Of a stretch of DNA of 64,000 nucleotides, positions 24,605 through 39,742 are shown one piece after another. The notes beneath the pieces were generated by a model. That model was not told where the DNA came from. It saw only the letters and a program-made list of their open reading frames with translations, and searched no databases. The stretch lies in IMG/VR virus record IMGVR_UViG_3300043446_003193, positions 1 through 64,000 of that record. One strand, written 5' to 3'. The translations under genes were made by a program, and so were the position numbers. Numbering within the stretch: the stretch's first letter is position 1; each line of letters begins with the position of its first letter.

Positions 24605-25240
24605 CTATTTAAATTTTAATCCTGTAAGTTTTTCTATATCCTCTCTCAAAACTTCATGCGATTTCAATCCTGATGGTTTGTCTGCCACATTATCAAATGA
24701 AAAGAAAAACCATTCACCTGTTTTTTTAATATGTACAACTTTCCAACACTCTTTTGGAACTGCTACTTTACCTATTCTTTTAATCTCACCAACATTCCCC
24801 GCCCAAATGTGAACTGAATCATCTTTGACTGCCCATTCTCTTGTTGCAGTTTCCAATGATTTCCAATCTCCTGCATTTAATGAATGATATTGAGCTGCCA
24901 TATTACTCATATAGAAACATTCAATTTGAACGTCTGCAGTTTGACATTGATTAGATGCCGCAGGAGACATATGTCCTCTATCAAATCCACTTCCTACATA
25001 ATCTGCTTTAATATCAGTTAATTCAACCGCTTGTGGGTCTGGTTGGAATGCATCTTTTCTTGGTAATGGATTTGGACAACCAACTTTTGCTTTGGTTTCC
25101 CACCACTCTACCATTACTGGATATCTTTTTGATTTACTGAAATGTGATGTGTAGTTTGTATGTTTTAATACTACGATGTCTTGAGAGAATGTAACTACAA
25201 ATAAAAATAACAATGTAGTCAATAACAATAATTTTTTCAT
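24605..25240 (-). CDS. secreted DNA/RNA non-specific endonuclease (NucA/EndG family)
   Basis: Signal peptide; DRGHMSPAA, FYMSNMAAQ..LNAGDWKSLE. Confidence 0.9.
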   Translation of the reverse strand: MKKLLLLTTLLFLFVVTFSQDIVVLKHTNYTSHFSKSKRYPVMVEWWETKAKVGCPNPLPRKDAFQPDPQAVELTDIKADYVGSGFDRGHMSPAASNQCQTADVQIECFYMSNMAAQYHSLNAGDWKSLETATREWAVKDDSVHIWAGNVGEIKRIGKVAVPKECWKVVHIKKTGEWFFFSFDNVADKPSGLKSHEVLREDIEKLTGLKFK

Positions 25241-25697: not shown

Positions 25698-27182
25698 TTA
25701 TAATACCATTCTACTACCTATAAGGAAATTATGTAAAATTGGTGTACCAGGTTGTGTGTTTACACTTGCTCTATAATTGAAACTAAATCCAAATCTTTTA
25801 CTAATTTTATAATCAAACGAACTACCCAACATAAACCCATAATGTCGTGTAACTAATGTATTTCCAGTTTTTGCATTATATGATATTGGTGAGTTCATTC
25901 CAAATACCTGTGGTGATATTGTAAGTTTTCTACTATATTGATAAGGTTTAGTCCAAAACGCCACAACAGAAGTCATTAAGTTGTAATTATACTTACCATC
26001 TGCATCTTTCATCAATAGGTTTATTAATCCCACATTATAACCATAAGTTCCTCTTTTCATATCAGGTTTAATCCAAGTATAACCCAACATATTCATATAA
26101 GTTCCTTTGAGGTATGCAAATGTAGTTCCGTATGAATGTATTGCTTTTAATTGTCCTTCTTCAAATTCCATTTTAGTATATCCACCACTTAATGCGTATT
26201 GGTCCAAAGAACTCCATATCATTCCGTTTACTGATACACTACTTTCTCCGGTCATACTTGCTCTACTCCAACCCAATCCTAATATTGCGTTATATTTTCT
26301 ATCTGGTCCTTCCGATGTTGTTAAATCCGATGAAACTAATTGTGGGTTAAGATTGATTTTCTTTTCTTTTTTCTTTTCATCTTTTTTATCATCCTTCTTT
26401 TCTTCTTTTTTGTCCTCTTTCTTATCTTCCTTTTTTTCTTCTTTCTTTTCATCGGACTTTTTCTCTTCCTTTTTTTCCTCACTCTTACTTTCGGATTTCT
26501 TTTCTTCAGTTTTGCTCTCCGATTTACTCTCACTCTTTGACTCAGATGATGAAGAACTACCCTCACTCTTTGTTTCGGTTTTACTCTCCGAAGATGAAGA
26601 TGAAGAACTGCTTGAGCTTGAAGATGATGAACTACTACTGCTACTACTTCCAGATGATGATGAACTACTACTTGCAGGTGGTGTAGAAGATGTTGATGAT
26701 GTAGATGCGGTTGCTCCACTACTTGCCGCAGAACTACTTGCCGTAGATGCCGATGAACTTGCTGCCGAACTTGCACTACTACTTGCTGCGGTTGATGCCG
26801 ATGAACTCGCTGCGGAAGAAGCTGCTGAACTTGCCGCGGATGATGCAGCTGCTGCGGCTGCTGTTGATGCTGCTTGATTTACTGTCGTTTGGACTGTTTG
26901 TGTTACTACTTGATTTGTAGGACACCCCATTGTTTGATACTTTGTATAAGTTGCGTTTAACCACAACTGGGTTGCGCCTGATTGAACTTCAAATGGTGTG
27001 AATGTCTTTACCTCATTGTAGAAAGAAACGGTGGCATTTCCGTTTATAATCGTTGTAGTCGCTATTTTTGCTTCACCGGTACACTTATCTATAAAAGTTT
27101 GAGTATAAATCTGCCCTTCGGCTTTATTTGCCGTTAGGATTGTAACAATTAATATCGTAAGAGTAACAATCCATTTTTTCAT
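25698..27182 (-). CDS. secreted protein: small N-domain, Ala/Ser-rich and Lys/Glu-rich linker, C-terminal beta-barrel-like domain
   Basis: Signal peptide, low-complexity linker, amphipathic strands with aromatic girdle. Confidence 0.7.
   Translation of the reverse strand: MKKWIVTLTILIVTILTANKAEGQIYTQTFIDKCTGEAKIATTTIINGNATVSFYNEVKTFTPFEVQSGATQLWLNATYTKYQTMGCPTNQVVTQTVQTTVNQAASTAAAAAASSAASSAASSAASSSASTAASSSASSAASSSASTASSSAASSGATASTSSTSSTPPASSSSSSSGSSSSSSSSSSSSSSSSSSSSESKTETKSEGSSSSSESKSESKSESKTEEKKSESKSEEKKEEKKSDEKKEEKKEDKKEDKKEEKKDDKKDEKKKEKKINLNPQLVSSDLTTSEGPDRKYNAILGLGWSRASMTGESSVSVNGMIWSSLDQYALSGGYTKMEFEEGQLKAIHSYGTTFAYLKGTYMNMLGYTWIKPDMKRGTYGYNVGLINLLMKDADGKYNYNLMTSVVAFWTKPYQYSRKLTISPQVFGMNSPISYNAKTGNTLVTRHYGFMLGSSFDYKISKRFGFSFNYRASVNTQPGTPILHNFLIGSRMVL
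26340..26880 (-). repeat. low-complexity coding repeats (ASSAASS, poly-Ser, KKEEK)
   Basis: Imperfect tandem codon repeats inside CDS 25698-27182. Confidence 0.8.
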
Positions 27183-27184
27183 TT

Positions 27185-27481
27185 TTAACGTCTGCCTCCT
27201 CTTGGCATGTATTTAGGCATTGGTCTTGGTGATGGTTGAATACGAACAGGAGGTGTAGGTCTAATAGGAACTACAATTCTAGGTGAATAGTTAAATCTAT
27301 AATATGGAGAACCCCAATAGTTAAAATATAAAGGTGTGTGTAAATATGTATCATCATAAATTACTCTCTTTCTAATTTCTACTAATTTTGTAGAGTCTTT
27401 AGGGTCAATCATTACATATCTAACTGGAGTACAACTTGCTATTCCCAATAACAACATTGCTGCTAATAATAAATTTTTCAT
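27185..27481 (-). CDS. small Pro-rich lipoprotein
   Basis: Lipobox LGIASC. Confidence 0.65.
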   Translation of the reverse strand: MKNLLLAAMLLLGIASCTPVRYVMIDPKDSTKLVEIRKRVIYDDTYLHTPLYFNYWGSPYYRFNYSPRIVVPIRPTPPVRIQPSPRPMPKYMPRGGRR

Positions 27482-27483: not shown

Positions 27484-27843
27484 TTACTTTAATTCGTTAT
27501 GTTTAATAATTAATTCACCTAAAACTTCAATTAAACCAACAAGTTCTTGAAATCCTATTTGGTCCATTTTTACTTTTCCTCCACATAATTCTTCCATATA
27601 TCCTCTTAATTCTTTTTTTGCAGAGTCTATATCAAACTCACCATTTTTTGCCTTTTCGTAATATGGTAATTTAACTTTAAAATGATGATATGTAAGAATT
27701 GCATCACCACCTTTTTCTTTTGCATCTTTTGTAATTTTAGTTGCACCTTCCCATCTATTTCCTGCAAAATCTAAAAATGGATCAAACTCACCACCATCAC
27801 TTTCTTCTTCTTTTAATAAATCTTTTAACTTTAACATTGGCAC
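27484..27843 (-). CDS. hypothetical protein with LKLKDLLKE N-terminal motif
   Basis: MPMLKLKDLLKEE. Confidence 0.65.
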   Translation of the reverse strand: MPMLKLKDLLKEEESDGGEFDPFLDFAGNRWEGATKITKDAKEKGGDAILTYHHFKVKLPYYEKAKNGEFDIDSAKKELRGYMEELCGGKVKMDQIGFQELVGLIEVLGELIIKHNELK

Positions 27844-28034
27844 ATTTTTAAAAATTCATCTTTATCAAATATAACATCTTCATTTCTGAATTTTGCCATC
27901 ATTGCAACTGCTATATCTTTTCTATTGTCTAAATCTTTTACCATTTTAATTATTTCCGCAACACCTACTACCATATCTCTATCGTTTGAATGGTCTGGAC
28001 TTGCTTCCTTAATTAACTTACTTAACTTTACCAC
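27831..28034 (-). CDS. hypothetical protein with KLSKLIKE N-terminal motif
   Basis: MVKLSKLIKEA. Confidence 0.6.
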   Translation of the reverse strand: MVKLSKLIKEASPDHSNDRDMVVGVAEIIKMVKDLDNRKDIAVAMMAKFRNEDVIFDKDEFLKMCQC

Positions 28035-28140
28035 TTTCTAATTTTTTTAAGATTGCTAAATTTGCATCTACTAATTTTTTCTTCTTTACGCCACTTCTTC
28101 TACTTCTCATTGCTCTTGGTTTTTTTGCTGCACTTCCCAT
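28018..28140 (-). CDS. 40-aa highly basic protein
   Basis: Manual translation MGSAAKKPRAMRSRRSGVKKKKLVDANLAILKKLESGKVK. Confidence 0.55.
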   Translation of the reverse strand: MGSAAKKPRAMRSRRSGVKKKKLVDANLAILKKLESGKVK

Positions 28141-28143
28141 AAT

Positions 28144-28866
28144 CTATTTAGTGAATACACCTTTTTTAATCATTTTATCTAATATATTTGCACATGCAAT
28201 ATCTAATGCCTTTTTAGTTGAGATACTAATTGTAGATTGATTGAATTTAATCGGGTCTATTGATGCATCAGAAACTAATGTTAATTGTCTATTTGTTTTA
28301 GCTTCACCTAAACCAGATGCTGCGATAATAGTTCCGTTCTCTGCATTTGTGAATCTAACTTGTAAACCTAAACGAGTTACTAAGTTATCTTTGATACCAT
28401 CTTTTAAATTAATTGTTTCATCTTCTGATACTGAATAATCATATACTTCAATTTCAACAAAGTAATGTGCTAATTTAATCTTTCCTCTACCATCTAATTT
28501 GTTTTCGGAAATTCCAGCTGCTGATGCCTGATATTGCTTTACCATTCTATTCTTAATCTCAGTCTTATCTTCGGTAAATTCAAATCTATTAAGGTTGTCC
28601 AAATATTCTAATACGATATTTGCAACACCCAATCCAACTCTCTTTTCTTTTAATTCAGGGTACATTTCGTACACTTCCTCACCAATACCACATTTTAAGA
28701 TTTGGATGTTCTTTTTAGGTCCATCATAATCCATAAAAGCGGATATATCTTTTTTCTTTTCAAAATCTGCTTTAAACTCTTCTGTTTTTGTTACTCCTAT
28801 TGTTTGTGCAACACCCACAACACTGCTTAACAAAAAGAAACCTAATAATACTAATAAATTTTTCAT
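28144..28866 (-). CDS. CsgG/HfaB-family envelope protein
   Basis: Signal peptide; GLGVANIVLEYL..LNRFEFTE, GLQVRFTNAENGTIIAASG. Confidence 0.65.
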   Translation of the reverse strand: MKNLLVLLGFFLLSSVVGVAQTIGVTKTEEFKADFEKKKDISAFMDYDGPKKNIQILKCGIGEEVYEMYPELKEKRVGLGVANIVLEYLDNLNRFEFTEDKTEIKNRMVKQYQASAAGISENKLDGRGKIKLAHYFVEIEVYDYSVSEDETINLKDGIKDNLVTRLGLQVRFTNAENGTIIAASGLGEAKTNRQLTLVSDASIDPIKFNQSTISISTKKALDIACANILDKMIKKGVFTK

Positions 28867-28890
28867 ACATAAATGTTTTCTTATAAATAT

Positions 28891-28920
28891 AAAAAAAGGG
28901 AGTAAAACTCCCTTTCTTTT
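28891..28920 (-). terminator. intrinsic terminator
   Basis: AAAGGGAGT-loop-ACTCCCTTT with U-tract; near-identical to 39712-39742. Confidence 0.75.
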
Positions 28921-30123
28921 TTAATTACCTTTTGATGGAAATCTAGTCCATCCATTAGACCATATTGGTTTGGATAGTGTTTCCATTTCAGCTTTTGTAT
29001 AAGATACCTCTTTGTTACCTTGTGATAAAGCTTTTGTTTTCATATCTGCTGCAGTAAATACAGTAGAAGTAGATTTGAAGTTTAACAATGGGTCAAATGC
29101 CTGAATTTCATTGTTTTCAAATTTAGAAACCCCATCTTTGTAAGCTTGTGCAGTTTCGTTACTTTCAATTGAAAACCCACCTTTTTGATAACCAATGATT
29201 TTTGAGTTAGTCATTGTAAATTGAGTTGCACGTCTCCATCTTAAACCTAAATTATGGTTTGCTAAAGAAGCTGCATCAAATGGTCCAACTAAAATCATAT
29301 TATCCAATTTAGGATGTGTGAATGGCTGTGCGGTTGTACCTGTTCCATCATTATCACACTCCACACCATTTCCAGCATCACCAGCATCTACGAATTGTGG
29401 GTCTCTCTTTGATACTGAATAAGATACCGAACCTCTATATCCAAAATCAAAATCGTAATCATCATCAGCAGTTGCGTATGCGTATAAGTTTTTAGCGTTT
29501 ACAGTTCCACCAAAGAATTCAAATGCATCATCGTTAGCGTAAACAGTTTGGATATACTCTAAAGTTGTTCCACTACCTACACCACCTAATGTTAATCCAT
29601 TGATTTCAGAGTTTGGCATTGCTGCAATTCCTGCATATTCAATTCTAACATATTTTAGGATACCACTATTATCCAAATCGTTAGTTCCACCATAAGGTCT
29701 ACCAATACCACCTTCAATTGTTGGTTCAGAAGTTCTATTGGTAGTTGCTCTACCTAATATAACTACACCACCCCAATCACCAGGCAATCTTTCACCAACA
29801 GCTTTACCAGATGTAAATACGATTGGTTTTGCTGCAGTTCCTTCTGCGATTATTTGTGCACCTCTTTCAATAATTAATGCACCTTTCTCAGCGATATCGG
29901 ATACGATTGTTGTACCTGGCTGAATGATAAGTTTTGCACCATCAATTACATAAACATATCCTTTTAAGGTCCATGTTTTATCTGATGTTAAAGTTGTTGT
30001 TGTGTTAATGTTACCACTCAAAATTGTTGATGATGGTACATTTACAGGAATATCAGTTCCACCTAATTCTTTTTTGCAACTGAATAATCCCAATACTAAA
30101 ATAATTCCTAATAGTTTTTTCAT
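28921..30123 (-). CDS. Bacteroidota-type beta-helix lipoprotein (TBDT-associated)
   Basis: Lipobox LFSC; PGDWGGVVILG, SGILKYVRIEYAG, DDAFEFFGG repeats. Confidence 0.75.
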   Translation of the reverse strand: MKKLLGIILVLGLFSCKKELGGTDIPVNVPSSTILSGNINTTTTLTSDKTWTLKGYVYVIDGAKLIIQPGTTIVSDIAEKGALIIERGAQIIAEGTAAKPIVFTSGKAVGERLPGDWGGVVILGRATTNRTSEPTIEGGIGRPYGGTNDLDNSGILKYVRIEYAGIAAMPNSEINGLTLGGVGSGTTLEYIQTVYANDDAFEFFGGTVNAKNLYAYATADDDYDFDFGYRGSVSYSVSKRDPQFVDAGDAGNGVECDNDGTGTTAQPFTHPKLDNMILVGPFDAASLANHNLGLRWRRATQFTMTNSKIIGYQKGGFSIESNETAQAYKDGVSKFENNEIQAFDPLLNFKSTSTVFTAADMKTKALSQGNKEVSYTKAEMETLSKPIWSNGWTRFPSKGN

Positions 30124-32372
30124 AAATTCAAATTTAATGTTAATGAAATTGTTTGTTCGTTGTTTGTTTTTATAAGATTTCTCTTTGTTTGTAACTTTTG
30201 ATAATAGATTGATGGTTGCGCAAATACATCGCCTATTGCCAATTTTATTTCCCCTTTATTTAATTTATGTAAAAGAGTTATATCCAATACATCTCTGCTG
30301 TTTTCAAAAATGTCTGGATAACCCTGAAATCCTATTGCTGATATTCTATCACCTACTCTATTGTAAGTTATGTTAATTGTATTTTTCTTTTTGTGAATAT
30401 TAAATCCACTATTTAATACATAATTTGATTGTCCCTGTAATTGTCTTTTAACTCCTTTAACATTTACTTCAGAATTCATCACAGAAGCGTTTGTGTAAAC
30501 ATCAAACCAATCATTTAATTTTTTACGAAATTCCAATTCAACACCATAAAGATATGCGTTATTGGGATTTGAATAAGTTAATAATAGATTAGATGGAACT
30601 GAACCATCTGCTACTATTTGCTCAATTGGTTTTATAAAGTTTTTACCAAAAAAAGATACTGAAATATTTTCTCCCGCGTTTGGATATAATTCCCATTTCA
30701 AATCTAAATTGTATATGTCAGATTTTTCCAATTTAGGATTACCCAATAATTGTGCATTTCTTACAAAATCATAATAAGCAAAATTAGCTACTTCTCTAAA
30801 CTCAGGTCTTGCTAATGTTTTACTTAATGAAAATCTATATTTTGTTTTTTCTAAATTGTAAGAAAGATTTAGTGATGGTAATACATCCAAATATTCTCTA
30901 TTAACTTTAACTTTACTTCCACTAAAATCTGCAGTAGATACATCAAATAGATTATATTCAGTTCTAACGCCTGTATTTAATTTCCATAAACCAAATTCTT
31001 TGTCCAACATTACATACCCACTACCTAAATCAAAATCAGCAGTATATTTGTCTGTGTTGTTTGTTATCTCATCTAACATATCAGTTGAAAGATAACGAAA
31101 TATTCTTGCATTAAATCCTCTAATCTTTTTTAAGTATCCACCACCAATCTTAATATCACCAAACGATTTATTAACATTACCATTAAAACTATTTTCATCC
31201 ATTACACTCCAAAAACGATATGTATCTCTCCATGCAGTTGTATATGGTTCGTTTACTCCTAATGATTTTGTAATTGGATTAACTCTATAATCAGGTTGTT
31301 CTCTGAATATAAAATTGTATCCTAAATTAAAATCCCAAGTTTTAAGTTTACCATCAAATTGAGAATTAACTACAACATTGTTTATATGGTTAGATGAATT
31401 ACTATGAACATTTTGAACATTATCATAGTTTTCACCATTTCTATTCATATAAGAATCATCGGCTTGATAGTTCACCAATGTTTTCCAACTATATCGGTTC
31501 TCACCTAAATAAGTTAAATTCAATAAACCATTTGCGGAAAATCTTTTTGAGAATAAAGTATCTCTATAATCGTATGCTAATTCAGTTGAAGATTGATAAT
31601 CTATTCTATCTATATAATTCAGTCCATAAGAATTTCTAATTGTTGAACTGAATAAAGCGTTGAATTTGTTTTTCTTTACACCAAATGATAGGCCACCATT
31701 TAAGTTTGGAGATGATGTAAACCCTTCTATGATTGGATTACTTAATTGTTTTGTGTATAACCTCTTATCACCATTACTACTAATACGATATCCGTAAGTA
31801 GATGGGAATGTGGAAGGGAATTCAGTAGCTTGAACTAACTTAAAATCTTTAAGAGATGAAACTGAGCCCCAACCACTTCCCAATGAGATATTAAAAAAGT
31901 TATCGGATACTTCTTTTGTTGAAACTTGCACCAATCCACCACTCCAATCGCCAGGTAGATTTGCCGATGCCGATTTAGATACTATAATATTATCAATTAA
32001 TGCCGTTGGAATTAAATCAAAAGAAAATGCTCTCTTATCAGGTTCAGTTGATGGTAGAAGGGTTTTGTTTAACATAGCAGAATTATAACGGTCTGCTAAT
32101 CCTCTTACTAATACAAACTTATCGTTTTGTATAGTAACACCACTTACTCTTTTAAGTGCATCCCCAACATTTCTATCAGGTGTTTTTTTAATAAAATCAA
32201 TGGATACACCATCCGAAACTACTGATGCGTTACGAATGGTTGATATTACAGCTACTTCAGTAGATTTTTTACCTGCTGAACGGACTGTAACCGTTGATAA
32301 TTGTTTGGAAAATAATGTGTCTTGGGAATATGTTACAAATGGAAGTAACAATAACAATAAAAAAATCCTCAT
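30120..32372 (-). CDS. TonB-dependent outer-membrane receptor
   Basis: Plug ALKRVSGVTIQ..VLVRGLADRY..SKSASANLPGDWSGG; barrel strands RPEFRE, GNPKL.KS. Confidence 0.9.
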   Translation of the reverse strand: MRIFLLLLLLPFVTYSQDTLFSKQLSTVTVRSAGKKSTEVAVISTIRNASVVSDGVSIDFIKKTPDRNVGDALKRVSGVTIQNDKFVLVRGLADRYNSAMLNKTLLPSTEPDKRAFSFDLIPTALIDNIIVSKSASANLPGDWSGGLVQVSTKEVSDNFFNISLGSGWGSVSSLKDFKLVQATEFPSTFPSTYGYRISSNGDKRLYTKQLSNPIIEGFTSSPNLNGGLSFGVKKNKFNALFSSTIRNSYGLNYIDRIDYQSSTELAYDYRDTLFSKRFSANGLLNLTYLGENRYSWKTLVNYQADDSYMNRNGENYDNVQNVHSNSSNHINNVVVNSQFDGKLKTWDFNLGYNFIFREQPDYRVNPITKSLGVNEPYTTAWRDTYRFWSVMDENSFNGNVNKSFGDIKIGGGYLKKIRGFNARIFRYLSTDMLDEITNNTDKYTADFDLGSGYVMLDKEFGLWKLNTGVRTEYNLFDVSTADFSGSKVKVNREYLDVLPSLNLSYNLEKTKYRFSLSKTLARPEFREVANFAYYDFVRNAQLLGNPKLEKSDIYNLDLKWELYPNAGENISVSFFGKNFIKPIEQIVADGSVPSNLLLTYSNPNNAYLYGVELEFRKKLNDWFDVYTNASVMNSEVNVKGVKRQLQGQSNYVLNSGFNIHKKKNTINITYNRVGDRISAIGFQGYPDIFENSRDVLDITLLHKLNKGEIKLAIGDVFAQPSIYYQKLQTKRNLIKTNNEQTISLTLNLNL

Positions 32373-32453
32373 AAATTATTTAAGTTAGTTCCCAAATAAT
32401 TATGAGGATTTTTTACAATATTTACCGATTTAATATTATCAAATCGTTATCTA

Positions 32454-32723
32454 TTATCCTTCTTGTTCAGCGTCTAATTTAGCCGCATCATGTTCTGCTT
32501 TTCTATTGATGTACTTATCAACCGAAGCAATACCAAATGAACCCAAAGTGATTACCAAAAATCCGTTAAAGATATACTCATTAATCAATAATGGTTTACC
32601 CATCCAACCTGTGATAAGGTCAACTGCTAATGCAATTACCATACAACCGAATGATAAGAAACCAACTACTGATTTTTCGTTGATGTCGTTGTTGTCTTTA
32701 AATAATTCTTTAAAAAATCCCAT
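32454..32723 (-). CDS. small membrane protein (holin-like candidate)
   Basis: Two TM helices, charged ends. Confidence 0.55.
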   Translation of the reverse strand: MGFFKELFKDNNDINEKSVVGFLSFGCMVIALAVDLITGWMGKPLLINEYIFNGFLVITLGSFGIASVDKYINRKAEHDAAKLDAEQEG

Positions 32724-32762
32724 AGTTTTAAATTTTAAATGTGAATAACTATGTAACCGATT

Positions 32763-33335
32763 TTATCCTTTGTACTCTTCTTGTAAAAGTCCACAATTTT
32801 GACACTCCATATGTCCATCACCATCAGCATCTCCCCATACATGTTCACATTGTCTATGTGCATGGTGTTCAAATTCTAACTTCTCCATTTCTTGATCATG
32901 TTCTTGTTGGTCTTTTGCCAATTCAAAGTTTTGTAGGTTTTCTACTACTGCTAATTTGCTAGCTGCAGCAGCTCCTTGAACAAATGCATCTGGAATAATT
33001 GGAGTTGGAATTGCGTTAGTTTCCTTCATATCATTTGTATGTGAAAGTGTAACACCATCTTCTTCATCCATTTTCTGAACTAACATCTTATCCTTATCGG
33101 TATCACTAAACCAATAGTCAATGATTTTACCATAAGAACCAATGAAAGCACCTAACAACAACATTAATAATTCTTTCCATGCTGCCGCCATTGGGGTTTG
33201 TAAACTAATTGCAGTAAAGATACCTGCAATAATTACCATAAACCCACCTAATACCATAGCGGTAATATACCATCTACGGCTCATCATTTTATTTAACAGG
33301 TCTCTAAACCCGCTTGGTGGTTGTTGATTACTCAT
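32763..33335 (-). CDS. membrane protein
   Basis: Two TM helices, LGAFIGSYGKIIDYWFSD, C-terminal C..H/C..C. Confidence 0.6.
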   Translation of the reverse strand: MSNQQPPSGFRDLLNKMMSRRWYITAMVLGGFMVIIAGIFTAISLQTPMAAAWKELLMLLLGAFIGSYGKIIDYWFSDTDKDKMLVQKMDEEDGVTLSHTNDMKETNAIPTPIIPDAFVQGAAAASKLAVVENLQNFELAKDQQEHDQEMEKLEFEHHAHRQCEHVWGDADGDGHMECQNCGLLQEEYKG

Positions 33336-33435
33336 TTTCTTTTTCTTTTTTAATTCTTTCGTTATTTGCGTGGTTCATAGCCCACAAAAAGAAAGCTATG
33401 AAAACTAATGTAACTCCTATTTTGTATCCCATATA

Positions 33436-33741
33436 TTACCAAGCTGCTGGCTTCTCTTTGAATTCATCACCTTCTTTTTTCTTAACTGGAGCTGCTGGTT
33501 TAGCTGCTTCACCACCTTTATTGATGATTACAGTTTTACCGCCACCTGCTTGTTGAGTTTGGTTGTTCTGAATGTTGATTACAGGAGCCGCTTGTTGAGT
33601 TGGTGTTGCTTCTTTTTCATCACCACCTGTTAATTTTGTTGTTACCCATCCACCTACACCTAAAGTGATTGTAGATACGAAACCGATGATTACATTCTTA
33701 ATAGATGAACCACCACCTTGTTGTTCTTGTTCTTCTGCCAT
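33436..33741 (-). CDS. hypothetical membrane-anchored protein
   Basis: One TM, Q/G/P-rich tail. Confidence 0.6.
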   Translation of the reverse strand: MAEEQEQQGGGSSIKNVIIGFVSTITLGVGGWVTTKLTGGDEKEATPTQQAAPVINIQNNQTQQAGGGKTVIINKGGEAAKPAAPVKKKEGDEFKEKPAAW

Positions 33742-33752
33742 ATACTTAATTT

Positions 33753-34121
33753 TTATAATTTGTTAAAATCTGTTATACCTAATTGTTTTCCGTTTACGTC
33801 ATATAAACCAATTCTATATGCTGATGATGGAAGTGCTGATGTATATACTTTTAAGATATTATCACCACTATTTACCCATGCTGTTTCTTTTGATACTACT
33901 CTGTTTGCAATATCAAATATCTTTATTGTCACATTTTGCCCTGCTTCAACTTTTACATTCATTGCTACTTCTGTTGTCACAAATGGTGATTGTAATTTAA
34001 TACCAACGGATTGTGTAATTGTAAGACCGTTGTCAACCGCAACTGGTGGGGTTACAAATGGGTCTTTTCTACATCCTGCTATAACCATAATTCCGAATAA
34101 TACGAATAATAGTTTTTTCAT
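33753..34121 (-). CDS. lipoprotein with T9SS-CTD-like Ig fold
   Basis: Lipobox IAGC; IKIFDIANRVV...LPSSAYRI. Confidence 0.6.
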   Translation of the reverse strand: MKKLLFVLFGIMVIAGCRKDPFVTPPVAVDNGLTITQSVGIKLQSPFVTTEVAMNVKVEAGQNVTIKIFDIANRVVSKETAWVNSGDNILKVYTSALPSSAYRIGLYDVNGKQLGITDFNKL

Positions 34122-34122
34122 C

Positions 34123-34467
34123 TTAATTTATTGTTATTTTAGTTTTTCCAATTTCTTTGTTACTCTCGTCCGTTAGGTATAAATATAAACTTTTTTGTGA
34201 TAATGATTTAGTATATATTTTTTTTGTGTTATCTCCCACAATTCCAGTAAATTTTTCCTTTGTTATTACCTGCGTTTGTGTTGAATCCATTAAAGTAAGT
34301 ATATATTTACCTGCTGATGTAAGTTTAATTTGTATATCTTGTCCGTCTTTAACCACTACTTCCGATTTTGAAAATATATCGGTTGTTGTTGGTTGTGGTG
34401 TTGGTATAACTTCTACTTTTCTACAAGCTACCAAACTTAAAAATAATATGAATAGTAATTTTTTCAT
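34123..34467 (-). CDS. lipoprotein, paralog of 33753-34121
   Basis: Lipobox LVAC; FTGIVGDNTKKIYTKSL vs NSGDNILKVYTSAL. Confidence 0.6.
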   Translation of the reverse strand: MKKLLFILFLSLVACRKVEVIPTPQPTTTDIFSKSEVVVKDGQDIQIKLTSAGKYILTLMDSTQTQVITKEKFTGIVGDNTKKIYTKSLSQKSLYLYLTDESNKEIGKTKITIN

Positions 34468-37127
34468 TATTGTATTTTTACTCCTAATGATTTTCCATCT
34501 TTATTAACTGCTTCCGAGTTACCCATGCTCACCAATCCCAATCCACCATTCAATTTTTGTGTAGTAGTGAATAGAACTTTATAAGTTGCTGATGTAATTT
34601 GTGAACCATCGGTATTTAAAGAACCCACATTAATAAAAGTTCCTTTGTTTGCGGAATAGTTAGTTGGTGAACCATTTACGATATATTCCGTTTTATTATA
34701 TTTTAACAAAGAGTTATCATAGTTTAATTGGAATTGAGTTCCTACTATGTTGTTATCTCCTGGGTTAAATACGATTTCTACATATACACTATCACCACTC
34801 AATTCAGTCATTATACTTGCATTCATTGGAATACTTACACTTGTGGATTTTATTCTTTCACCAAAGTTTGCTGACATATTTGTTATACCATTTGCCGGCG
34901 GTGTTGCTGAATGTGATAAGTTTACATCACCTTTCCAAGTTACTGCTAAATTGTATGAATAGTTTGTTTTTCCTTCTAATAAACTAAAACTATATTCCTT
35001 TCCTAAATAAGATGGGAATTGTTGCCAATTAGATTTTCCAATAGTTCCGTATGTAGAGTCCAACACAATTTTCATAGTGCTATCCAAAACATACTTATTT
35101 ACTAAATCTCTTGCACCAGTTAGATATTGTAACAATCTAAAGCAATCTCTTTCATCAAATACATTATTACCATCTACGTCTGCGTTTTTGAATTGAATAC
35201 CATATCCAAATTGTGTTCCACTTCCACCACCAAACAAACCACCTGCTTCTGAATATTCTTTGAATGCTAAATAAACATCCGATACAGTCACAATACTATT
35301 ATAAAGTGTTTTAAGTTGTGTAGAGTCATAGTCTTGGAATACAAATTTGTGTTGTTTGTATGTACCTTGTTGTGTAAGTGTAATTGTACTTTGGAAAGCG
35401 TAATCCGTATTCCAATTATTTACATTTCTAATGTATGAATTTGATGCTGAAGTTCCATCTGTTATTTTTGTTAGTGGTGATGGGACTGTGTATATTGCCC
35501 AACCATTTGCATCATGTGAAGTATATGTCATAGGGCCATCATATGCATCAAATATTTTTGTATGTGTGATTTTGGTAGGGTCAATACTACCAACTTGTCT
35601 CATATCAATTAATAATCTACTTTTACCACTACCCAACCAACTTGCGTTTGGATTTGTATAAGACCATTCAACTTGACCCGGTGTAATTGTTGCTTTATAT
35701 GCAGTTGGATTGGCAACAAATTGATAACTCAATCCCCACGCACCCCACACATCCGATGTTACTCCGTTTTGTGTTGTTGATGGATAATCGTTTTGCCCTT
35801 CAACTATTTTAATGTAAACTTCTTTTGTTTGTCCGGCAGTTACTATTCCTGCATGCACCGCTGCTTTTGGAATATATGAGTCGTTAGTGTATATGTTTGT
35901 TCCCCAAATTGCACCACCACCAGTGTTACCTGTTATGGTCATTTTATATATCTTACCAATATCACTTTCACTATATTGAGTCATATCATTTGCTGCTGCT
36001 ATTGATATTGCAGATGAAAATACCTTTGCCGTATCTAATTGAGTTGATAGAGTTACCCTTCCCACTCCATTTAATGCCACATTTGAATTTGCAGTCCAAG
36101 CTGATGTTGCATCATTTCTTTTATGTAATGCTGCTGAAAATTTAGTTTCATCAATATTACCACCAAAGTTAATTGTAAATTGTGATTTTAAATTATTGTT
36201 TACACCATTATAATGCACCACACTATTATTATAAAAATCAGTAAAAGTTTGGTCATCAGGATTACTCCAAGTTCCAAACTCAATTACATATCCACCCAAT
36301 CCACCAGGGAACGCCGTTGCTTCGGGTCCAAAATCATTCCATTGTGAACCATTCCATTTTGTTACAACATAATCCTCACCAGGTCCCCAGTTGTTTGGTT
36401 CACCACTTGCCCAGTTATTATATTGCCCTGTTTGATTTGTTGAATTTATTCTTACGACAGTTCCATTTTCAGGTCCTGCATCAATTACAAATCTACCTTC
36501 GGTTACATTATCCGTAAGTGCGAATATAATATTATTCCCAGGTACATTGTTTACAACAAAGTTATCTTCATCCGATGATGTGATTGTCATTAAATAACCC
36601 GTTTGTCCTTTGAATGATTGTTGAGTACAATAGGTTTTAAGATTATTATATGCAGTTACAGAAGTTCCACTAAATGCGGTTACCCCGGTAAACCCACTCA
36701 TAGGTCTATAAAAGTGTCCGTTTGTTGGTAAGTAATAATATCCCGTTGGGTTGACAGTTGCTGATACTGAAATACTAATATCACCCGCTGTTCCCGTTGT
36801 GTTTATTTTCATTGATGCTAATACATTGTTAATATTAGCCATTGTTCCGGTGAATGAAATACGAGTTTTATTACCACTCATTGTGTAACCGGTTGATGCA
36901 GTTACGCCGGATGTTGTTGAGAAATAAAATGTAGTTCCGCTTGGTGCTGTGGGTAAACCAATTGCACAAAGTAAAGTTGCAGTAGAGTTGAACCCACTCA
37001 ATGTAAATCCACTTGCATCTTGTCCTGATGTATTGACAGTAAATTCTTTAGGGTCTGGTGCATTTACCTGCTGACCAAACCCTAAAAATGATATAAATAA
37101 GAATAGTGTAACTAATAATTTTTTCAT
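34467..37127 (-). CDS. large secreted adhesin-like protein: C-type-lectin-like, LCCL, dockerin-like and cohesin-like domains
   Basis: WASGEPNN..EDY...WND (CTL); IWGTNIYTNDSYIPKAAVHAG (LCCL); DVDGNNVFDERD (dockerin/EF loop); GTQFQLNYDNSLLKY (cohesin). Confidence 0.7.
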   Translation of the reverse strand: MKKLLVTLFLFISFLGFGQQVNAPDPKEFTVNTSGQDASGFTLSGFNSTATLLCAIGLPTAPSGTTFYFSTTSGVTASTGYTMSGNKTRISFTGTMANINNVLASMKINTTGTAGDISISVSATVNPTGYYYLPTNGHFYRPMSGFTGVTAFSGTSVTAYNNLKTYCTQQSFKGQTGYLMTITSSDEDNFVVNNVPGNNIIFALTDNVTEGRFVIDAGPENGTVVRINSTNQTGQYNNWASGEPNNWGPGEDYVVTKWNGSQWNDFGPEATAFPGGLGGYVIEFGTWSNPDDQTFTDFYNNSVVHYNGVNNNLKSQFTINFGGNIDETKFSAALHKRNDATSAWTANSNVALNGVGRVTLSTQLDTAKVFSSAISIAAANDMTQYSESDIGKIYKMTITGNTGGGAIWGTNIYTNDSYIPKAAVHAGIVTAGQTKEVYIKIVEGQNDYPSTTQNGVTSDVWGAWGLSYQFVANPTAYKATITPGQVEWSYTNPNASWLGSGKSRLLIDMRQVGSIDPTKITHTKIFDAYDGPMTYTSHDANGWAIYTVPSPLTKITDGTSASNSYIRNVNNWNTDYAFQSTITLTQQGTYKQHKFVFQDYDSTQLKTLYNSIVTVSDVYLAFKEYSEAGGLFGGGSGTQFGYGIQFKNADVDGNNVFDERDCFRLLQYLTGARDLVNKYVLDSTMKIVLDSTYGTIGKSNWQQFPSYLGKEYSFSLLEGKTNYSYNLAVTWKGDVNLSHSATPPANGITNMSANFGERIKSTSVSIPMNASIMTELSGDSVYVEIVFNPGDNNIVGTQFQLNYDNSLLKYNKTEYIVNGSPTNYSANKGTFINVGSLNTDGSQITSATYKVLFTTTQKLNGGLGLVSMGNSEAVNKDGKSLGVKIQ

Positions 37128-37130
37128 TTA

Positions 37131-38780: not shown

Positions 38781-38782
38781 AT

Positions 38783-39430
38783 TTACTCAAATAGTTTGGT
38801 GATAAGTTTAATAGAACCTTTCTTCAATGCATTACTCAATGAAGTTTGGTTAAACTTACCACCCTCATCTACTATGAGAGTTGACATTGAGATTTCTGCT
38901 GAACTTTCTTCTACAATAACCTCTTTGTCTTTTTTGCCATCTTTGTAAAGTGTTCCTCTAAGGCGAATGACTACCTCTTCTTCTCCTTTGTGAAATACGG
39001 AGATATTTGATTTTGTTGTTAAAACATCTAAATAGATAATTTCAACTTTTAATTTTTGTGTTGCTGATGGTGCTAAATCCAATCCTTTTTCTTGTAATGC
39101 TTCTTCCAAAACATTTTTAACACCAAATGCTAAATTTCTGTTTCCAGCTAATTTACCAACTTTAACTTTATTTTCTACACTTTCTACCCAAATGTGTTCT
39201 TCGGCATTGTACCAAATATTTTCTGGTGAGTTTTTGAATGTACCATCAAATTTCCAACTAAACCAATTTGCAATGTTTGTTTCTAATTCAGTTTTACCTG
39301 CAAAATGTATACCAACCATTGTAAGTTGAAATAATAATGCAAATACAATCCATATACCTACTAAAGTTAAAAACCCTCTAAATAGATAATCTCCTAAATT
39401 TTGTTTTAAATGTAATAACTTTGCTTTCAT
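38783..39430 (-). CDS. membrane-anchored hypothetical protein
   Basis: N-terminal TM; periplasmic alpha/beta domain. Confidence 0.6.
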   Translation of the reverse strand: MKAKLLHLKQNLGDYLFRGFLTLVGIWIVFALLFQLTMVGIHFAGKTELETNIANWFSWKFDGTFKNSPENIWYNAEEHIWVESVENKVKVGKLAGNRNLAFGVKNVLEEALQEKGLDLAPSATQKLKVEIIYLDVLTTKSNISVFHKGEEEVVIRLRGTLYKDGKKDKEVIVEESSAEISMSTLIVDEGGKFNQTSLSNALKKGSIKLITKLFE

Positions 39431-39485
39431 AATATATCCGTTTTACTTTACGGATATAAATATAATAAAATGATTATAACCATCT

Positions 39486-39674: not shown

Positions 39675-39711
39675 AAAACTAATATACGAATTAATTTTGA
39701 AAATACAAAAT

Positions 39712-39742
39712 AAAAAAGGGAGTATTTAACTCCCTTTCTTTT
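39712..39742 (-). terminator. intrinsic terminator after the endolysin
   Basis: AAAGGGAGT-TAAAT-ACTCCCTTT plus U-tract. Confidence 0.75.

What the first reader, a model, noticed from the sequence alone, without database searches (positions are those of the whole stretch)
28144..32372. CsgG-like protein, beta-helix lipoprotein and TonB-dependent receptor in one operon
Seen: intact ORFs with signal peptides or lipoboxes. Established: TBDT plus surface-lipoprotein pairs drive nutrient uptake in Bacteroidota, and CsgG-family proteins form outer-membrane secretion pores. Inference: the phage remodels the host outer membrane for both import and export; the CsgG-like protein may export the cohesin/lectin proteins.
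Basis: partly seen in the sequence, partly recalled or inferred. Interest (0 to 1): 0.6.

Follow-up and report, generated by a model that had tools for sequence, protein, structure and literature searches.

The report
Phage-borne phosphate-regulon outer-membrane importer cassette
A 209-kb freshwater phage carries a two-gene outer-membrane uptake system (TonB-dependent transporter plus surface lipoprotein) captured from its host's phosphate-starvation locus, and by chance it sits beside an unrelated core phage gene with a CsgG fold; the three genes do not form one system.

Summary
The first is a TonB-dependent transporter (TBDT, 30120-32372). The second is a right-handed beta-helix lipoprotein (28921-30123). 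The third is a CsgG-fold secreted protein (28144-28866).

They do not form one unit. The TBDT and lipoprotein genes overlap by 4 nt. Together they form a discrete cassette of about 3.55 kb that is present or absent among related phages, and it carries its own conserved upstream element. A hairpin resembling a terminator separates the cassette from the CsgG-like gene.

The same gene pair is adjacent in every bacterial locus long enough to hold both genes, out of the 80 Bacteroidota loci retrieved. The lipoprotein has a homolog in 227 of 301 sampled Bacteroidia genomes. The closest bacterial copies are in Aquirufa (67-72% identity). There, and in several Chitinophagaceae, the pair sits among phosphate genes (PHO4, OprP, PhoU-like, PhoR/PhoB-like). 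This matches the Pi-starvation-induced Fjoh_0545/0546 pair of Flavobacterium johnsoniae.

The 61 distinct phage copies form one clade that is sister to Aquirufa. They are under purifying selection, with dN/dS of 0.03-0.27.

The CsgG-like gene is a core gene of this phage group. It occurs in at least 500 viral contigs and in the cultured Flavobacterium phage immuto. It lacks the lipid anchor and usually occurs without the TBDT.

Most likely reading: the cassette is a phosphorus-acquisition auxiliary gene, possibly controlled by the host PhoB. This would be a new variant of known kinds.

The parts
32434..32449 (-). Direct repeat resembling a Pho box (TAAC-N7-TAAT, 11-nt period), starting 5 nt after the stop of the upstream 89-aa ORF and about 60-75 nt before the TBDT ATG
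   Evidence: A match was found in 32 distinct sites among 47 distinct phage upstream regions. A weight matrix trained only on the phage sites ranks a site just upstream of the bacterial TBDT gene first of about 34,000 positions in 18 of 66 bacterial loci, and in the top 3 in 31. The strict pattern occurs once in the 209-kb genome, but it was derived from this site. Binding by PhoB is inferred, not shown.
32384..32404 (-). Second conserved upstream block (CATAATTATTTGGGAACTAAC), a likely core promoter or leader of the cassette
   Evidence: Conserved in most phage copies whichever insertion site the cassette occupies, while the sequence further upstream varies. The promoter role is inferred.
30120..32372 (-). 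TonB-dependent transporter, 750 aa. This is the short form: the signal peptide is joined directly to the TonB box, and the CarboxypepD_reg N-terminal domain is missing.
   Evidence: Plug plus OMP_b-brl_3; TIGR01782 below its cut-off. 67-69% identical to the Aquirufa TBDT and 31-47% to other Bacteroidota. N-terminal alignment. dN/dS 0.07-0.19.
28921..30123 (-). Beta-helix lipoprotein (PF28492 Beta_helix_4), 400 aa, the putative surface 'lid' of the TBDT. Its start overlaps the TBDT stop by 4 nt.
   Evidence: Lipobox LGLFSC. PF28492 in close homologs. AF2 pLDDT 88.5; Z about 24 to AlgE4, AlgG, tailspikes and NosD. It lies directly after the TBDT gene in every bacterial and viral locus long enough to hold both. 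The phage copies form one clade sister to Aquirufa.
28891..28919 (-). Hairpin plus T-run resembling an intrinsic terminator, lying between the lipoprotein stop and the CsgG-like start
   Evidence: 13-pair stem followed by a T-run. Homology with cassette-free relatives resumes at about 28914-28931, so the hairpin predates the insertion.
28144..28866 (-). CsgG-fold secreted protein, 240 aa, with a signal peptide and no lipid-anchor Cys. It is a core gene of this phage group and not part of the cassette.
   Evidence: 57% identical to Flavobacterium phage immuto gp017. Present in at least 500 viral contigs. dN/dS 0.07-0.17.
32454..33741 (-). Three small membrane proteins (101, 190 and 89 aa) that normally sit immediately upstream of the CsgG-like gene
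   Evidence: Homologs lie upstream of the CsgG-like gene in 62, 67 and 26 of 80 viral loci. The 101-aa protein is 43% identical to immuto gp016, which overlaps gp017.
25698..27182 (-). Secreted 494-aa protein, the usual downstream neighbour of the CsgG-like gene
   Evidence: Present downstream in 64 of 80 viral loci. Has a signal peptide. No Pfam or PHROG hit.

Best explanation
The finding contains two separate things.

**(1) The cassette.** A cassette of about 3.55 kb (roughly 28920-32465) encodes a TonB-dependent transporter and a translationally coupled beta-helix surface lipoprotein. It was captured once from an Aquirufa-like (Cytophagales) host. It belongs to the widespread Bacteroidota pair that lies in phosphate-starvation loci: Fjoh_0545/Fjoh_0546 'FII' in F. 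johnsoniae, BT4055/BT4056 in B. thetaiotaomicron, and the TBDT next to ElpS in Caulobacter.

The phage lineage has kept the pair under purifying selection as an auxiliary gene cassette. During infection the two proteins would enter the host outer membrane through the host Sec/Lol/Bam pathways. The lipoprotein would cap the transporter on the cell surface and capture a phosphorus-bearing substrate. The host TonB would power its import. This would raise the phosphorus supply for replicating a 209-kb genome in P-limited lakes.

A direct repeat upstream, conserved in the phages and resembling a Pho box, suggests that the cassette is still switched on by the host PhoB.

**(2) The neighbouring 240-aa gene.** This is an unrelated, core phage gene for a CsgG-fold protein that has lost its lipid anchor. 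It belongs to a conserved cell-envelope and lysis-region module that also holds an endolysin, small lipoproteins, membrane proteins, lectin/cohesin/LCCL proteins and a secreted nuclease.

**Shown versus inferred.** Shown: the folds and domains, the conserved pairing, the bacterial phosphate context, single-clade origin, selection, and the cassette boundaries. Inferred: surface localisation, the substrate, PhoB control, and the benefit to the phage.
For: **Domains and folds:**

**Conserved pairing:** The TBDT gene lies directly before the lipoprotein gene in the bacterial loci (gaps from -20 to 298 nt) and in all complete viral loci, nearly always with a 4-nt overlap.

**Prevalence:** 227 of 301 sampled Bacteroidia genomes have a homolog of the lipoprotein. 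This count includes one unpublished genome, G181; without it the count is 226 of 300.

**Phosphate context:**
- Aquirufa locus: TBDT, lipoprotein, an alkaline-phosphatase-superfamily enzyme, a PHO4 transporter, porin O/P and a glycosyltransferase.
- PHO4 lies within 8 kb in 23 loci.
- Pollutibacter locus: PHO4, PhoU_div, porin O/P, TBDT, lipoprotein, then a histidine kinase and response regulator.

**Literature:**
- Fjoh_0545 (pf07715, pf13715, pf14905) and Fjoh_0546 (IPR011050) lie in the phoBR cluster alongside OprP and a pf04101 glycosyltransferase. They are induced by log2 8-10 on Pi depletion, and Fjoh_0546 is a major exoprotein (PMC8115612).
- BT4056 has a pectin-lyase fold, is a putative lid, is homologous to ElpS, and is adjacent to a TBDT in 621 genera (bioRxiv 10.1101/2023.03.17.533168).
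- ElpS is a surface lipoprotein induced by Pi starvation and associated with phosphatase activity (PMC2996285).

**Origin and retention:**
- The 61 distinct phage sequences form one clade (SH-aLRT 99) sister to Aquirufa/Spirosomataceae (100).
- dN/dS is 0.03-0.27.
- GC has shifted to phage values: 0.30/0.35 against 0.38/0.43 in Aquirufa.

**Cassette boundaries:** cassette-free relatives and contig joints.

**Upstream motif:**

**Functional features kept:** the TonB box and plug are retained.

**Separateness of the CsgG-like gene:**
Against: - No direct alignment of the window's lipoprotein with Fjoh_0546, BT4056 or ElpS could be run, because those sequences were not retrievable here. Family identity therefore rests on fold, domain architecture, gene order, locus content and prevalence.
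- The phosphate context appears in only about a third of the bacterial loci examined.
- The substrate is unknown even in bacteria.
- The window's TBDT lacks the N-terminal CarboxypepD_reg domain that the bacterial copies carry and that 41 of 61 phage copies keep. This could impair or change its function.
- The post-Cys sequence (CKKELGGTD) is a weaker surface-export signal than in many bacterial homologs.
- The Pho box is not established for Bacteroidota. A loose version of the motif is not enriched genome-wide in Aquirufa (14 hits against 32 for the control), and its other occurrences are not beside phosphate genes.
- The phage has no PhoH.
- Contigs from RNA libraries touch all three genes, but this does not prove transcription.
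Confidence: 0.6

Rival explanations
1. Superinfection exclusion or receptor remodelling. The phage-made TBDT and its lid would replace, mask or crowd the host surface receptors that this or competing phages use. This would protect the infected cell and stop progeny being lost on cell debris. Nutrient uptake would be irrelevant.
For: [quoted passage not shown] The window holds a second outer-membrane barrel (42686-45967) and many other envelope proteins. A third of the phage TBDTs have lost the N-terminal domain, which fits a relaxed need for transport.
Against: The TonB box and plug are strongly conserved under purifying selection. The lid stays translationally coupled to the TBDT in nearly every complete phage copy. 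The cassette keeps the upstream repeat shared with the bacterial phosphate-locus genes, which points to nutrient-conditional expression. The cassette is optional among close relatives.
Confidence: 0.2
2. The three genes form one import-and-export operon, and the CsgG-like protein forms an outer-membrane pore that secretes the phage's cohesin/lectin proteins.
For: The CsgG fold is real. The CsgG-like gene is syntenic with lectin, cohesin and LCCL genes, both in this phage group and in phage immuto. Those proteins carry signal peptides.
Against: A terminator-like hairpin separates the genes. Only 12 of 80 CsgG-like loci have the TBDT within 5 kb, and it can lie on either side. The bacterial pairs have no CsgG-like neighbour. 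The protein lacks the lipid anchor that CsgG is known to need to reach the outer membrane (from my own knowledge). No CsgE, CsgF or CsgA-like neighbours were detected. The tetramer prediction gave no verdict. Folded lectin or cohesin domains would not pass a pore of CsgG size (inference).
Confidence: 0.1
3. For the 240-aa gene alone: a lysis-timing or envelope-permeabilising pore, as proposed for the CsgG/CsgF genes of pelagimyophages and the OM43 phage Melnitz.
For: CsgG in phages has precedent, along with a lysis hypothesis (PMC7029224, PMC9004378). Here the gene lies in a region with an endolysin (39742-40578), small lipoproteins and membrane proteins. It is strongly conserved across at least 500 viral contigs.
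Against: There is no lipobox and no CsgF homolog. The second transmembrane hairpin is poorly modelled (pLDDT 58-65 over residues 190-210). Oligomerisation is unsupported. The fold is also shared by non-pore proteins such as LptE, PelC, LpoB and TraT.
Confidence: 0.2
4. Artefact: host DNA was mis-assembled into a phage contig, or the contig is bacterial.
For: The pair has close bacterial homologs. The record is metagenomic.
Against: At least 123 viral contigs from many samples carry the pair between phage genes. At least 5 other contigs share the same gene order. A 367-nt contig bridges the upstream junction with no differences. GC matches the phage. The phage copies form their own clade, at most 72% identical to any bacterium found. 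A terminase and a phage replication module are present.
Confidence: 0.01

Closest known systems
Fjoh_0545/Fjoh_0546 (TBDT plus 'FII' lipoprotein) of the Flavobacterium johnsoniae phoBR cluster; BT4055/BT4056 of Bacteroides thetaiotaomicron; the TBDT next to ElpS in Caulobacter crescentus
   Same: The TBDT has the same Pfam architecture (Plug, OMP_b-brl_3 and, in the long phage forms, CarbopepD_reg_2). The next gene encodes a lipoprotein with a pectin-lyase-type beta-helix. The bacterial relatives of the window's pair lie with OprP, PHO4, PhoU-like, PhoR/PhoB-like and a pf04101 glycosyltransferase, which is the content of the F. johnsoniae cluster.
   Different: This pair is encoded by a phage. 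The window's TBDT lacks the N-terminal domain. The lipoprotein is about 45-75 aa shorter than most of the non-Aquirufa bacterial homologs retrieved.
Cyanophage phosphate auxiliary genes (pstS, phoA) controlled by the host PhoR/PhoB (Zeng and Chisholm 2012; cited from memory, not read here)
   Same: A host Pho-regulon gene is carried by a lytic phage, apparently together with a PhoB-type direct repeat upstream.
   Different: The gene product is an outer-membrane TonB-dependent importer with a surface lid, not a periplasmic binding protein or phosphatase. The hosts are freshwater Bacteroidota. Regulation is untested.
Beta-barrel outer-membrane proteins of huge phages, including a Lak-phage TonB-dependent receptor (bioRxiv 10.64898/2026.10.24.761521)
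   Same: A large phage encodes a plug-bearing TBDT expected to form a 22-strand barrel, and contigs from RNA libraries carry it.
   Different: That work does not use the word 'lipoprotein' (0 occurrences) and proposes receptor interference. The paired lid, the phosphate-locus origin, the cassette structure and the upstream motif are described only here.
CsgG curli channel (E. coli; PDB 4uv2, 4uv3, 6l7a) and the phage CsgG/CsgF genes of pelagimyophages and phage Melnitz
   Same: The fold matches (Z 12.5-13.8 over 172-195 residues). The conserved Y-P motif aligns with the CsgG constriction loop. CsgG-like genes have precedent in large aquatic myophages.
   Different: The protein has no lipid anchor, no CsgF/E/A/B partners, and no direct Pfam CsgG hit. 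The region aligned to the first CsgG transmembrane hairpin is 5-6 residues shorter, and the second is uncertain. The hosts are Bacteroidota.

Membership tests
TonB-dependent transporters | N-terminal plug domain | tested here: met
   PF07715, E 2e-8 on residues 52-141. It is the only Plug match in the 209-kb genome.
TonB-dependent transporters | C-terminal outer-membrane beta-barrel | tested here: met
   PF14905, E 7e-25 on residues 401-747. TIGR01782 scores 183 bits, below its cut-off of 310. The strand number was not modelled.
TonB-dependent transporters | TonB box ahead of the plug | tested here: met
   LSTVTVRS aligns with LSEVVVRA and LSDVVVRT of the long phage and Aquirufa forms. This is a motif match only; binding was not tested.
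Bacteroidota TBDTs with an N-terminal CarboxypepD_reg-like extension | CarbopepD_reg_2/CarboxypepD_reg domain between the signal peptide and the TonB box | tested here: not met
   Absent from the window's 750-aa protein and from 20 of 61 complete phage copies. Present in 41 of 61 phage copies and in the Aquirufa TBDT that was scanned.
SusC/SusD pairs | SusC-type TBDT (TIGR04056) with a SusD-family lipoprotein | tested here: not met
   No SusC or SusD model matched in Pfam or NCBIfam. The partner is a beta-helix, not the helical SusD fold.
Beta_helix_4 (PF28492) / FII-ElpS type phosphate-starvation lipoproteins | Membership of PF28492 | tested here: inconclusive
   The model is absent from the local Pfam copy. 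Homologs 82-91% identical carry it in precomputed annotation, and the nearest Atlas clusters are 100% PF28492.
Beta_helix_4 (PF28492) / FII-ElpS type phosphate-starvation lipoproteins | Right-handed parallel beta-helix (pectin-lyase fold) | tested here: met
   pLDDT 88.5, pTM 0.87. Z 23.9 to AlgE4, AlgG and the CBA120 tailspike over 264-284 residues.
Beta_helix_4 (PF28492) / FII-ElpS type phosphate-starvation lipoproteins | Lipoprotein encoded directly downstream of a TBDT | tested here: met
   Lipobox plus Cys in the window's protein and in all bacterial and phage homologs printed. Adjacent to the TBDT gene in every locus long enough to hold both.
Beta_helix_4 (PF28492) / FII-ElpS type phosphate-starvation lipoproteins | Sequence homology to Fjoh_0546, BT4056 or ElpS themselves | not tested
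   Those sequences could not be fetched with the tools. This feature is inferred from architecture, locus content and 75% prevalence in Bacteroidia.
Beta_helix_4 (PF28492) / FII-ElpS type phosphate-starvation lipoproteins | Induction by phosphate starvation and surface exposure | not testable with these tools
   This needs culture work. Only contextual evidence (phosphate genes nearby, upstream repeat) is available.
CsgG family (PF03783) | Match to the family model | tested here: not met
   The window's protein has no hit at E<=0.1 as a protein or at E<=1 in the genome scan. However, 21 of 37 relatives match (best E 1.9e-17), and the family profile hits E. coli CsgG at E 1.4e-3.
CsgG family (PF03783) | CsgG fold | tested here: met
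   Foldseek E 6e-8 with TM 0.46-0.55. VIA Z 12.5-13.8 and rmsd 2.6-3.5 A over 172-195 residues, with the top 8 entries all CsgG.
CsgG family (PF03783) | N-terminal lipidation (lipobox Cys) | tested here: not met
   No lipobox Cys at the signal-peptide cleavage site in the window's protein, most close phage homologs or immuto gp017. Distant relatives do have a lipobox.
CsgG family (PF03783) | Ring oligomer forming a transmembrane beta-barrel | tested here: inconclusive
   The four-copy prediction scored 0.31 and 0.01 against a mark of 0.42, giving no verdict. Long hairpin at 135-174; pLDDT is 58-65 over residues 190-210.
CsgG family (PF03783) | Curli partners CsgE, CsgF, CsgA, CsgB nearby | tested here: not met
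   No such Pfam or PHROG matches in ten neighbouring ORFs.
Phage auxiliary genes under host Pho control | PhoB-type direct repeat upstream that is shared with host Pho genes | tested here: inconclusive
   The repeat is found in 32 distinct sites among 47 phage upstream regions. A phage-trained matrix finds the bacterial TBDT upstream sites and the Aquirufa PHO4 upstream site. No Bacteroidota Pho box is on record, and the loose pattern is not enriched.

The most novel reading that the evidence does not exclude
A lineage of large freshwater Bacteroidota phages captured not only an outer-membrane phosphorus importer (TBDT plus surface lid) but also its PhoB-responsive control region. The virus would then read the host's phosphate status and build a new nutrient gate in the outer membrane only when phosphorus is scarce. 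This would be the first phosphorus auxiliary system acting at the outer membrane, and the first TBDT-lid pair shown to work from a phage genome. The cassette moves between two insertion sites and is polymorphic within lake populations, so it could mark phage ecotypes tuned to P limitation.
Probability: 0.35. Interest if true: 0.75.

Novelty: new variant of a known kind. Interest (0 to 1): 0.6.

Why it matters
Phosphorus usually limits production in lakes, and phage replication consumes a lot of it. Known phage phosphate genes (pstS, phoA, phoH) act in the periplasm or cytoplasm of cyanobacteria and Proteobacteria.

Here the most strongly Pi-induced outer-membrane system of Bacteroidota appears in at least 123 viral contigs from many lakes and rivers. 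It is under purifying selection, and it has a candidate regulatory site. Its function is still unknown even in bacteria.

The pair is compact and has been selected in phages, which makes it a convenient handle for three tasks:
- working out what this widespread TBDT-lid family imports;
- defining the Pho box of Bacteroidota;
- testing whether large phages change nutrient uptake at the cell surface or merely block superinfection.

Separately, the CsgG-fold core gene extends the puzzle of phage CsgG from marine pelagimyophages to Bacteroidota phages, one of which (phage immuto) is in culture.

Tried and rejected
- **Direct family and sequence searches.** Pfam, NCBIfam, PHROGs and PDB sequence searches of the 400-aa and 240-aa proteins gave nothing significant. 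PF28492 is not in the local Pfam, so it could not be scanned or sought in the control genomes.
- **Oligomer test.** The complex prediction with four copies of the CsgG-like protein (residues 21-240) returned 'no answer', with scores of 0.31 and 0.01 against a mark of 0.42. It counts neither for nor against oligomerisation.
- **Viral scan with the divergent alignment.** This failed for lack of a conserved stretch. It was redone with the single protein.
- **Context of distant CsgG-like relatives.** Their contigs were too short to give context.
- **Loose motif TTAAC-N6-KTAAC in Aquirufa.** There were 14 hits against 32 for the control pattern. The other intergenic hits lie next to unrelated genes (AMP-binding, Rieske, DUF5777), so no Pho regulon could be reconstructed.
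- **PhoH.** Not found in the phage genome.
- **Sigma-70-type promoter scan.** It found fewer sites than in shuffled sequence, and it does not suit Bacteroidota promoters.
- **Literature.** Searches for phage TBDT auxiliary genes found one recent preprint on huge-phage outer-membrane proteins and nothing on this pair. No Bacteroidota Pho box was found.
- **Assembly chimera hypothesis.** Considered and rejected; see the rival explanations.
- **Logan contigs.** They are short (200-560 nt) because of strain diversity, so no single contig spans the whole stretch. The RNA-library contigs cannot prove transcription.

Full report
**Setting.** The window is the first 64 kb of a 209,443-bp IMG/VR virus record that CheckV rates as 100% complete.

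- The record has a large terminase at 160431-161030.
- Its replication genes are collinear with the cultured Flavobacterium phage vB_FspM_immuto.
- GC is 31.8% throughout.
- Nearly all genes in the window lie on the minus strand.
- The window also carries about 19 tRNA genes and a tmRNA.

This is a large lytic-type phage of freshwater Bacteroidota.

**The observation.** Three intact minus-strand ORFs lie at exactly the stated coordinates.

ORF 30120-32372 (750 aa) has a signal peptide, a TonB-box-like LSTVTVRS, a Plug domain and an OMP_b-brl_3 barrel. It is the only plug-bearing protein in the genome.

ORF 28921-30123 (400 aa) starts with a lipobox (LGLFSC), and its ATG overlaps the TBDT stop by 4 nt.

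- It matched no family in the local libraries.
- Homologs at 82-91% identity carry PF28492 Beta_helix_4.
- The AlphaFold model (pLDDT 88.5) aligns with right-handed beta-helices such as AlgE4, AlgG, tailspikes, NosD and PL6 lyases, at Z about 24 over 264-300 residues.

ORF 28144-28866 (240 aa) has a cleavable signal peptide but no lipobox cysteine.

- The exhaustive search found only 203 representative clusters of relatives.
- A profile of 37 relatives hits E. coli CsgG in the PDB at E 1.4e-3. In that alignment the family's invariant Y-P lines up with the CsgG constriction loop.
- 21 of the 37 relatives match Pfam CsgG.
- The model (pLDDT 76) finds CsgG first by Foldseek (E 6e-8). By VIA-align the score is Z 12.5-13.8 over 172-195 residues, and the top eight entries are all CsgG. 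PelC, LptE, Cj1090c and TraT follow at Z 8-11.

**The three genes are two things.** Several results separate the first two genes from the third.

- A terminator-like hairpin (28891-28919) lies in the 54-nt gap before the CsgG-like gene.
- In the bacterial loci retrieved with the lipoprotein, a TBDT gene directly precedes it wherever the locus is long enough. No CsgG-like gene lies within 8 kb in any of them. None was found in the Aquirufa avitistagni genome with this query.
- In 81 viral loci carrying the pair, the two genes are always adjacent, with a 4-nt overlap in nearly all complete copies. A CsgG-like gene lies within 6 kb in only 21 of them: upstream in 16 and downstream in 5.
- At least 500 viral contigs encode the CsgG-like protein, against at least 123 for the lipoprotein.
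- Of the 80 best CsgG-like loci, only 12 have the TBDT within 5 kb.
- The usual neighbours of the CsgG-like gene are two small membrane proteins upstream (homologs of 33436-33741 and 32763-33335) and a secreted 494-aa protein downstream (25698-27182).
- Phage immuto has the same local order: lectin gp013, gp014, cohesin gp015, gp016, gp017 (57% identical to the window's protein), gp018. It has no TBDT there.

**Cassette boundaries.** Cassette-free relatives align to the window up to about 32466-32506 and again from about 28914-28931, with only 19-36 nt in between. Public contigs from two lake studies show matching joints, 28912 to 32487 and 28811 to 32526.

The inserted block of about 3.55 kb is therefore the upstream control region plus the two genes. 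The hairpin predates the insertion.

In other phages the same block, with the same upstream sequence, sits on the other side of the CsgG-like gene. This includes the closest relatives, whose lipoprotein is 99% identical.

**Not a chimera.**

- The pair lies between phage genes in contigs from many independent samples.
- At least five other contigs share the window's exact gene order.
- A 367-nt contig bridges the upstream junction without a single difference.
- GC of the two genes (0.30 and 0.35) is at phage level rather than Aquirufa level (0.38 and 0.43).

**Origin and selection.** The nearest bacterial copies are in Aquirufa and related Spirosomataceae, at 67-69% identity for the TBDT and 71-73% for the lipoprotein. 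Other Bacteroidota are at 31-47% and 51-66%.

In a maximum-likelihood tree of 138 lipoproteins, all 61 distinct phage sequences form one clade (SH-aLRT 99). That clade is sister to the Aquirufa/Spirosomataceae clade, and the two are joined at 100 on a long branch. The bacterial rows were the best 80 of 450 loci; incomplete ORFs and duplicates were left out. Transfer from host to phage is inferred from the broad bacterial distribution.

Pairwise dN/dS between the window and other phage copies is 0.07-0.19 for the TBDT, 0.03-0.27 for the lipoprotein and 0.07-0.17 for the CsgG-like gene. Identities of the three genes are discordant between contigs, which indicates recombination.

**What the pair is.** The lipoprotein family is found in 227 of 301 sampled Bacteroidia genomes.

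In Aquirufa the pair is followed by an alkaline-phosphatase-superfamily enzyme, a PHO4 phosphate transporter and a phosphate-selective porin, with a pf04101-type glycosyltransferase beside them. A PHO4 gene lies within 8 kb in 23 loci. In Pollutibacter the order is PHO4, PhoU_div, porin O/P, TBDT, lipoprotein, and then a histidine kinase and an OmpR-type regulator.

This is the content of the phoBR cluster of Flavobacterium johnsoniae. There, Fjoh_0545 (TBDT; pf07715, pf13715, pf14905) and Fjoh_0546 (lipoprotein 'FII'; pectin-lyase fold) rise by log2 8-10 on Pi depletion, and Fjoh_0546 is a major exoprotein (PMC8115612).

Price et al. describe the same kind of pair as BT4055/BT4056. They call it a putative non-SusD lid, report it adjacent to a TBDT in 621 genera, and find it homologous to Caulobacter ElpS. 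ElpS is a surface lipoprotein induced by Pi starvation and linked to phosphatase activity (PMC2996285).

I could not fetch those named proteins, so family identity is an inference from fold, architecture, gene order, locus content and prevalence. The invariant acidic clusters in the family (for example D198, D199, E202, D220, D221, D224, D226, E255, D257) suggest metal-mediated binding or catalysis. This too is inference.

**A candidate control site.** Among 47 distinct phage upstream regions, 32 distinct sites match an 11-nt-period direct repeat (window 32434-32449, TAAC-N7-TAAT). It is followed about 30 nt later by a second conserved block (32384-32404).

A weight matrix trained only on the phage sites was scanned over 66 bacterial loci. 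A site within -300 to +60 of the TBDT start ranked first of about 34,000 positions in 18 loci, and in the top three in 31. The bacterial sites read (G/T)TAACA-N5-(G/T)TAACA. In Aquirufa the best hit of the whole 17-kb locus lies just before the PHO4 gene.

The architecture resembles PhoB boxes, and cyanophage pstS offers a precedent (recalled from memory). There are four caveats:

- related genomes are not independent samples;
- AT-rich intergenic DNA favours the matrix;
- no Bacteroidota Pho box is on record;
- the loose pattern is not enriched genome-wide in Aquirufa, and its other hits are not beside phosphate genes.

**Peculiarities of the window's copy.** Its TBDT is the short form found in 20 of 61 complete phage copies. 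The CarboxypepD_reg-like N-terminal domain is cleanly deleted, so the signal peptide runs straight into the TonB box. The plug is almost unchanged. The lipoprotein's post-cysteine sequence (KKELGGTD) has fewer acidic residues than many bacterial homologs, so surface export is plausible but not assured.

**Mechanism proposed.** Host PhoB, or a phage promoter, drives the cassette. Host Sec, Lol and Bam insert the barrel and the lipoprotein. The lipoprotein caps the barrel on the surface and captures a phosphorus-bearing ligand, and host TonB-ExbBD powers its import. Host periplasmic phosphatases and the PHO4/Pst transporters finish the job.

The main rival is receptor remodelling for superinfection exclusion, as proposed for huge-phage outer-membrane proteins. 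The conserved TonB box and plug, the strict coupling to the lid and the conserved upstream repeat favour transport, but none of them excludes the rival.

**The CsgG-like protein.** It lies in a conserved envelope region holding these genes:

- an endolysin (39742-40578);
- a membrane protein with a weak Lipoprotein_16 match (38783-39430);
- cohesin-like (37131-38780) and LCCL (34467-37127) secreted proteins;
- two small lipoproteins (33753-34467);
- three membrane proteins (32454-33741);
- a 98-aa lipoprotein (27185-27481);
- the 494-aa secreted protein (25698-27182);
- a secreted non-specific nuclease (24605-25240).

CsgG/CsgF genes are already known in pelagimyophages and in the OM43 phage Melnitz, where a role in lysis timing was suggested. 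In this phage the anchor cysteine is missing, although distant relatives have it. No CsgF/E/A/B-like neighbours were found. The four-copy prediction gave no verdict.

Whether the protein forms a pore, and whether it serves the lectin/cohesin proteins, remains open.

**Verdict.** The interesting part is the phosphate-locus TBDT-lid cassette and its possible PhoB wiring. It is a new variant of two known kinds: phage phosphate auxiliary genes and huge-phage outer-membrane proteins.

Noticed in passing
window 32384-32449 (- strand); bacterial loci L007-L085 upstream of the TBDT; L009:10449: A direct repeat with an 11-nt period, (G/T)TAAC-N6-(G/T)TAAC in bacteria and TAAY-N7-TAAY in phages, lies upstream of the TBDT genes across Bacteroidota, upstream of the Aquirufa PHO4 gene, and in the phage cassette. 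It is a candidate for the undescribed Pho box of Bacteroidota.
   Followed up: partly
window 28912/32487 and 28811/32526 (joints); loci L171, L181, L182, L195, L196: Alleles with and without the cassette coexist in the same kinds of lake metagenomes. The cassette also occupies two alternative sites on either side of the CsgG-like gene, even among relatives whose lipoprotein is 99% identical.
   Followed up: partly
window 30120-32372; viral loci L087-L166: There are two length classes of phage TBDT. The class of about 750 aa (20 of 61 copies) lacks the CarboxypepD_reg N-terminal domain through a clean deletion. The class of about 825 aa (41 of 61 copies) keeps it.
   Followed up: partly
window 42686-45967 (-): A second outer-membrane beta-barrel protein (1093 aa; signal peptide, CarboxypepD_reg plus OMP_b-brl_4 PF25183, no plug detected). 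In Aquirufa a gene of the same architecture (L251) contains a similar TTAAC-N6-GTAAC repeat near its 5' end.
   Followed up: no
window 13965-20832 (-): An array of about 19 tRNA genes, one with an odd anticodon call, plus a phage-encoded tmRNA (20432-20832; tag ending in YAVAA). This explains the GC-rich, ORF-poor stretch at 16-20 kb.
   Followed up: no
window 24605-25240 (-): A non-specific DNA/RNA endonuclease (Endonuclease_NS, E 4e-33) with a signal peptide, so it is probably exported. Phage immuto has a nuclease at the matching end of its module (gp012). It might add to phosphorus or nucleotide scavenging.
   Followed up: no
window 33436-41729 (-): A conserved envelope and lysis-region module: an endolysin (PG_binding_1 plus GH19, 39742-40578), a 215-aa membrane protein with a weak Lipoprotein_16 match, a cohesin-like 549-aa protein and an LCCL-domain 886-aa secreted protein, two small lipoproteins (114 and 122 aa; the latter DUF3244-like), and membrane proteins. 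No spanin or holin was recognised by the libraries.
   Followed up: partly
window 5477-9236 (-): A MoxR/CbbQ-type AAA+ ATPase (424 aa) beside a 763-aa protein with a weak PHROG match to a family annotated as a cobalamin biosynthesis protein. This resembles the CobS/CobT-like pair I recall from large phages.
   Followed up: no
loci L023 and L072 (genome contigs): MAGs labelled Brevundimonas vancanneytii and 'uncultured Citrobacter' carry TBDT-lipoprotein loci that nest among Sediminibacterium/Chitinophagaceae sequences in the tree. The bins are probably mislabelled or contaminated.
   Followed up: no
locus L002 8823-9942 (related 278-kb phage contig): In this relative, two DUF2589 genes sit between the membrane-protein genes and the CsgG-like gene. 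A 269-aa ORF next to its cassette has its homolog far away in this genome (about 159.0-159.3 kb). The neighbourhood is a hot spot for rearrangement.
   Followed up: no
window 27800-33400, RNA-library runs X21 and X22: Metatranscriptome-library contigs match parts of all three genes. There are near-identical pieces at 32047-32336 and 31972-32157 in the TBDT and at 29379-29527 in the lipoprotein. Coverage of the CsgG-like gene is almost continuous over 28027-28773. DNA carry-over cannot be excluded.
   Followed up: partly
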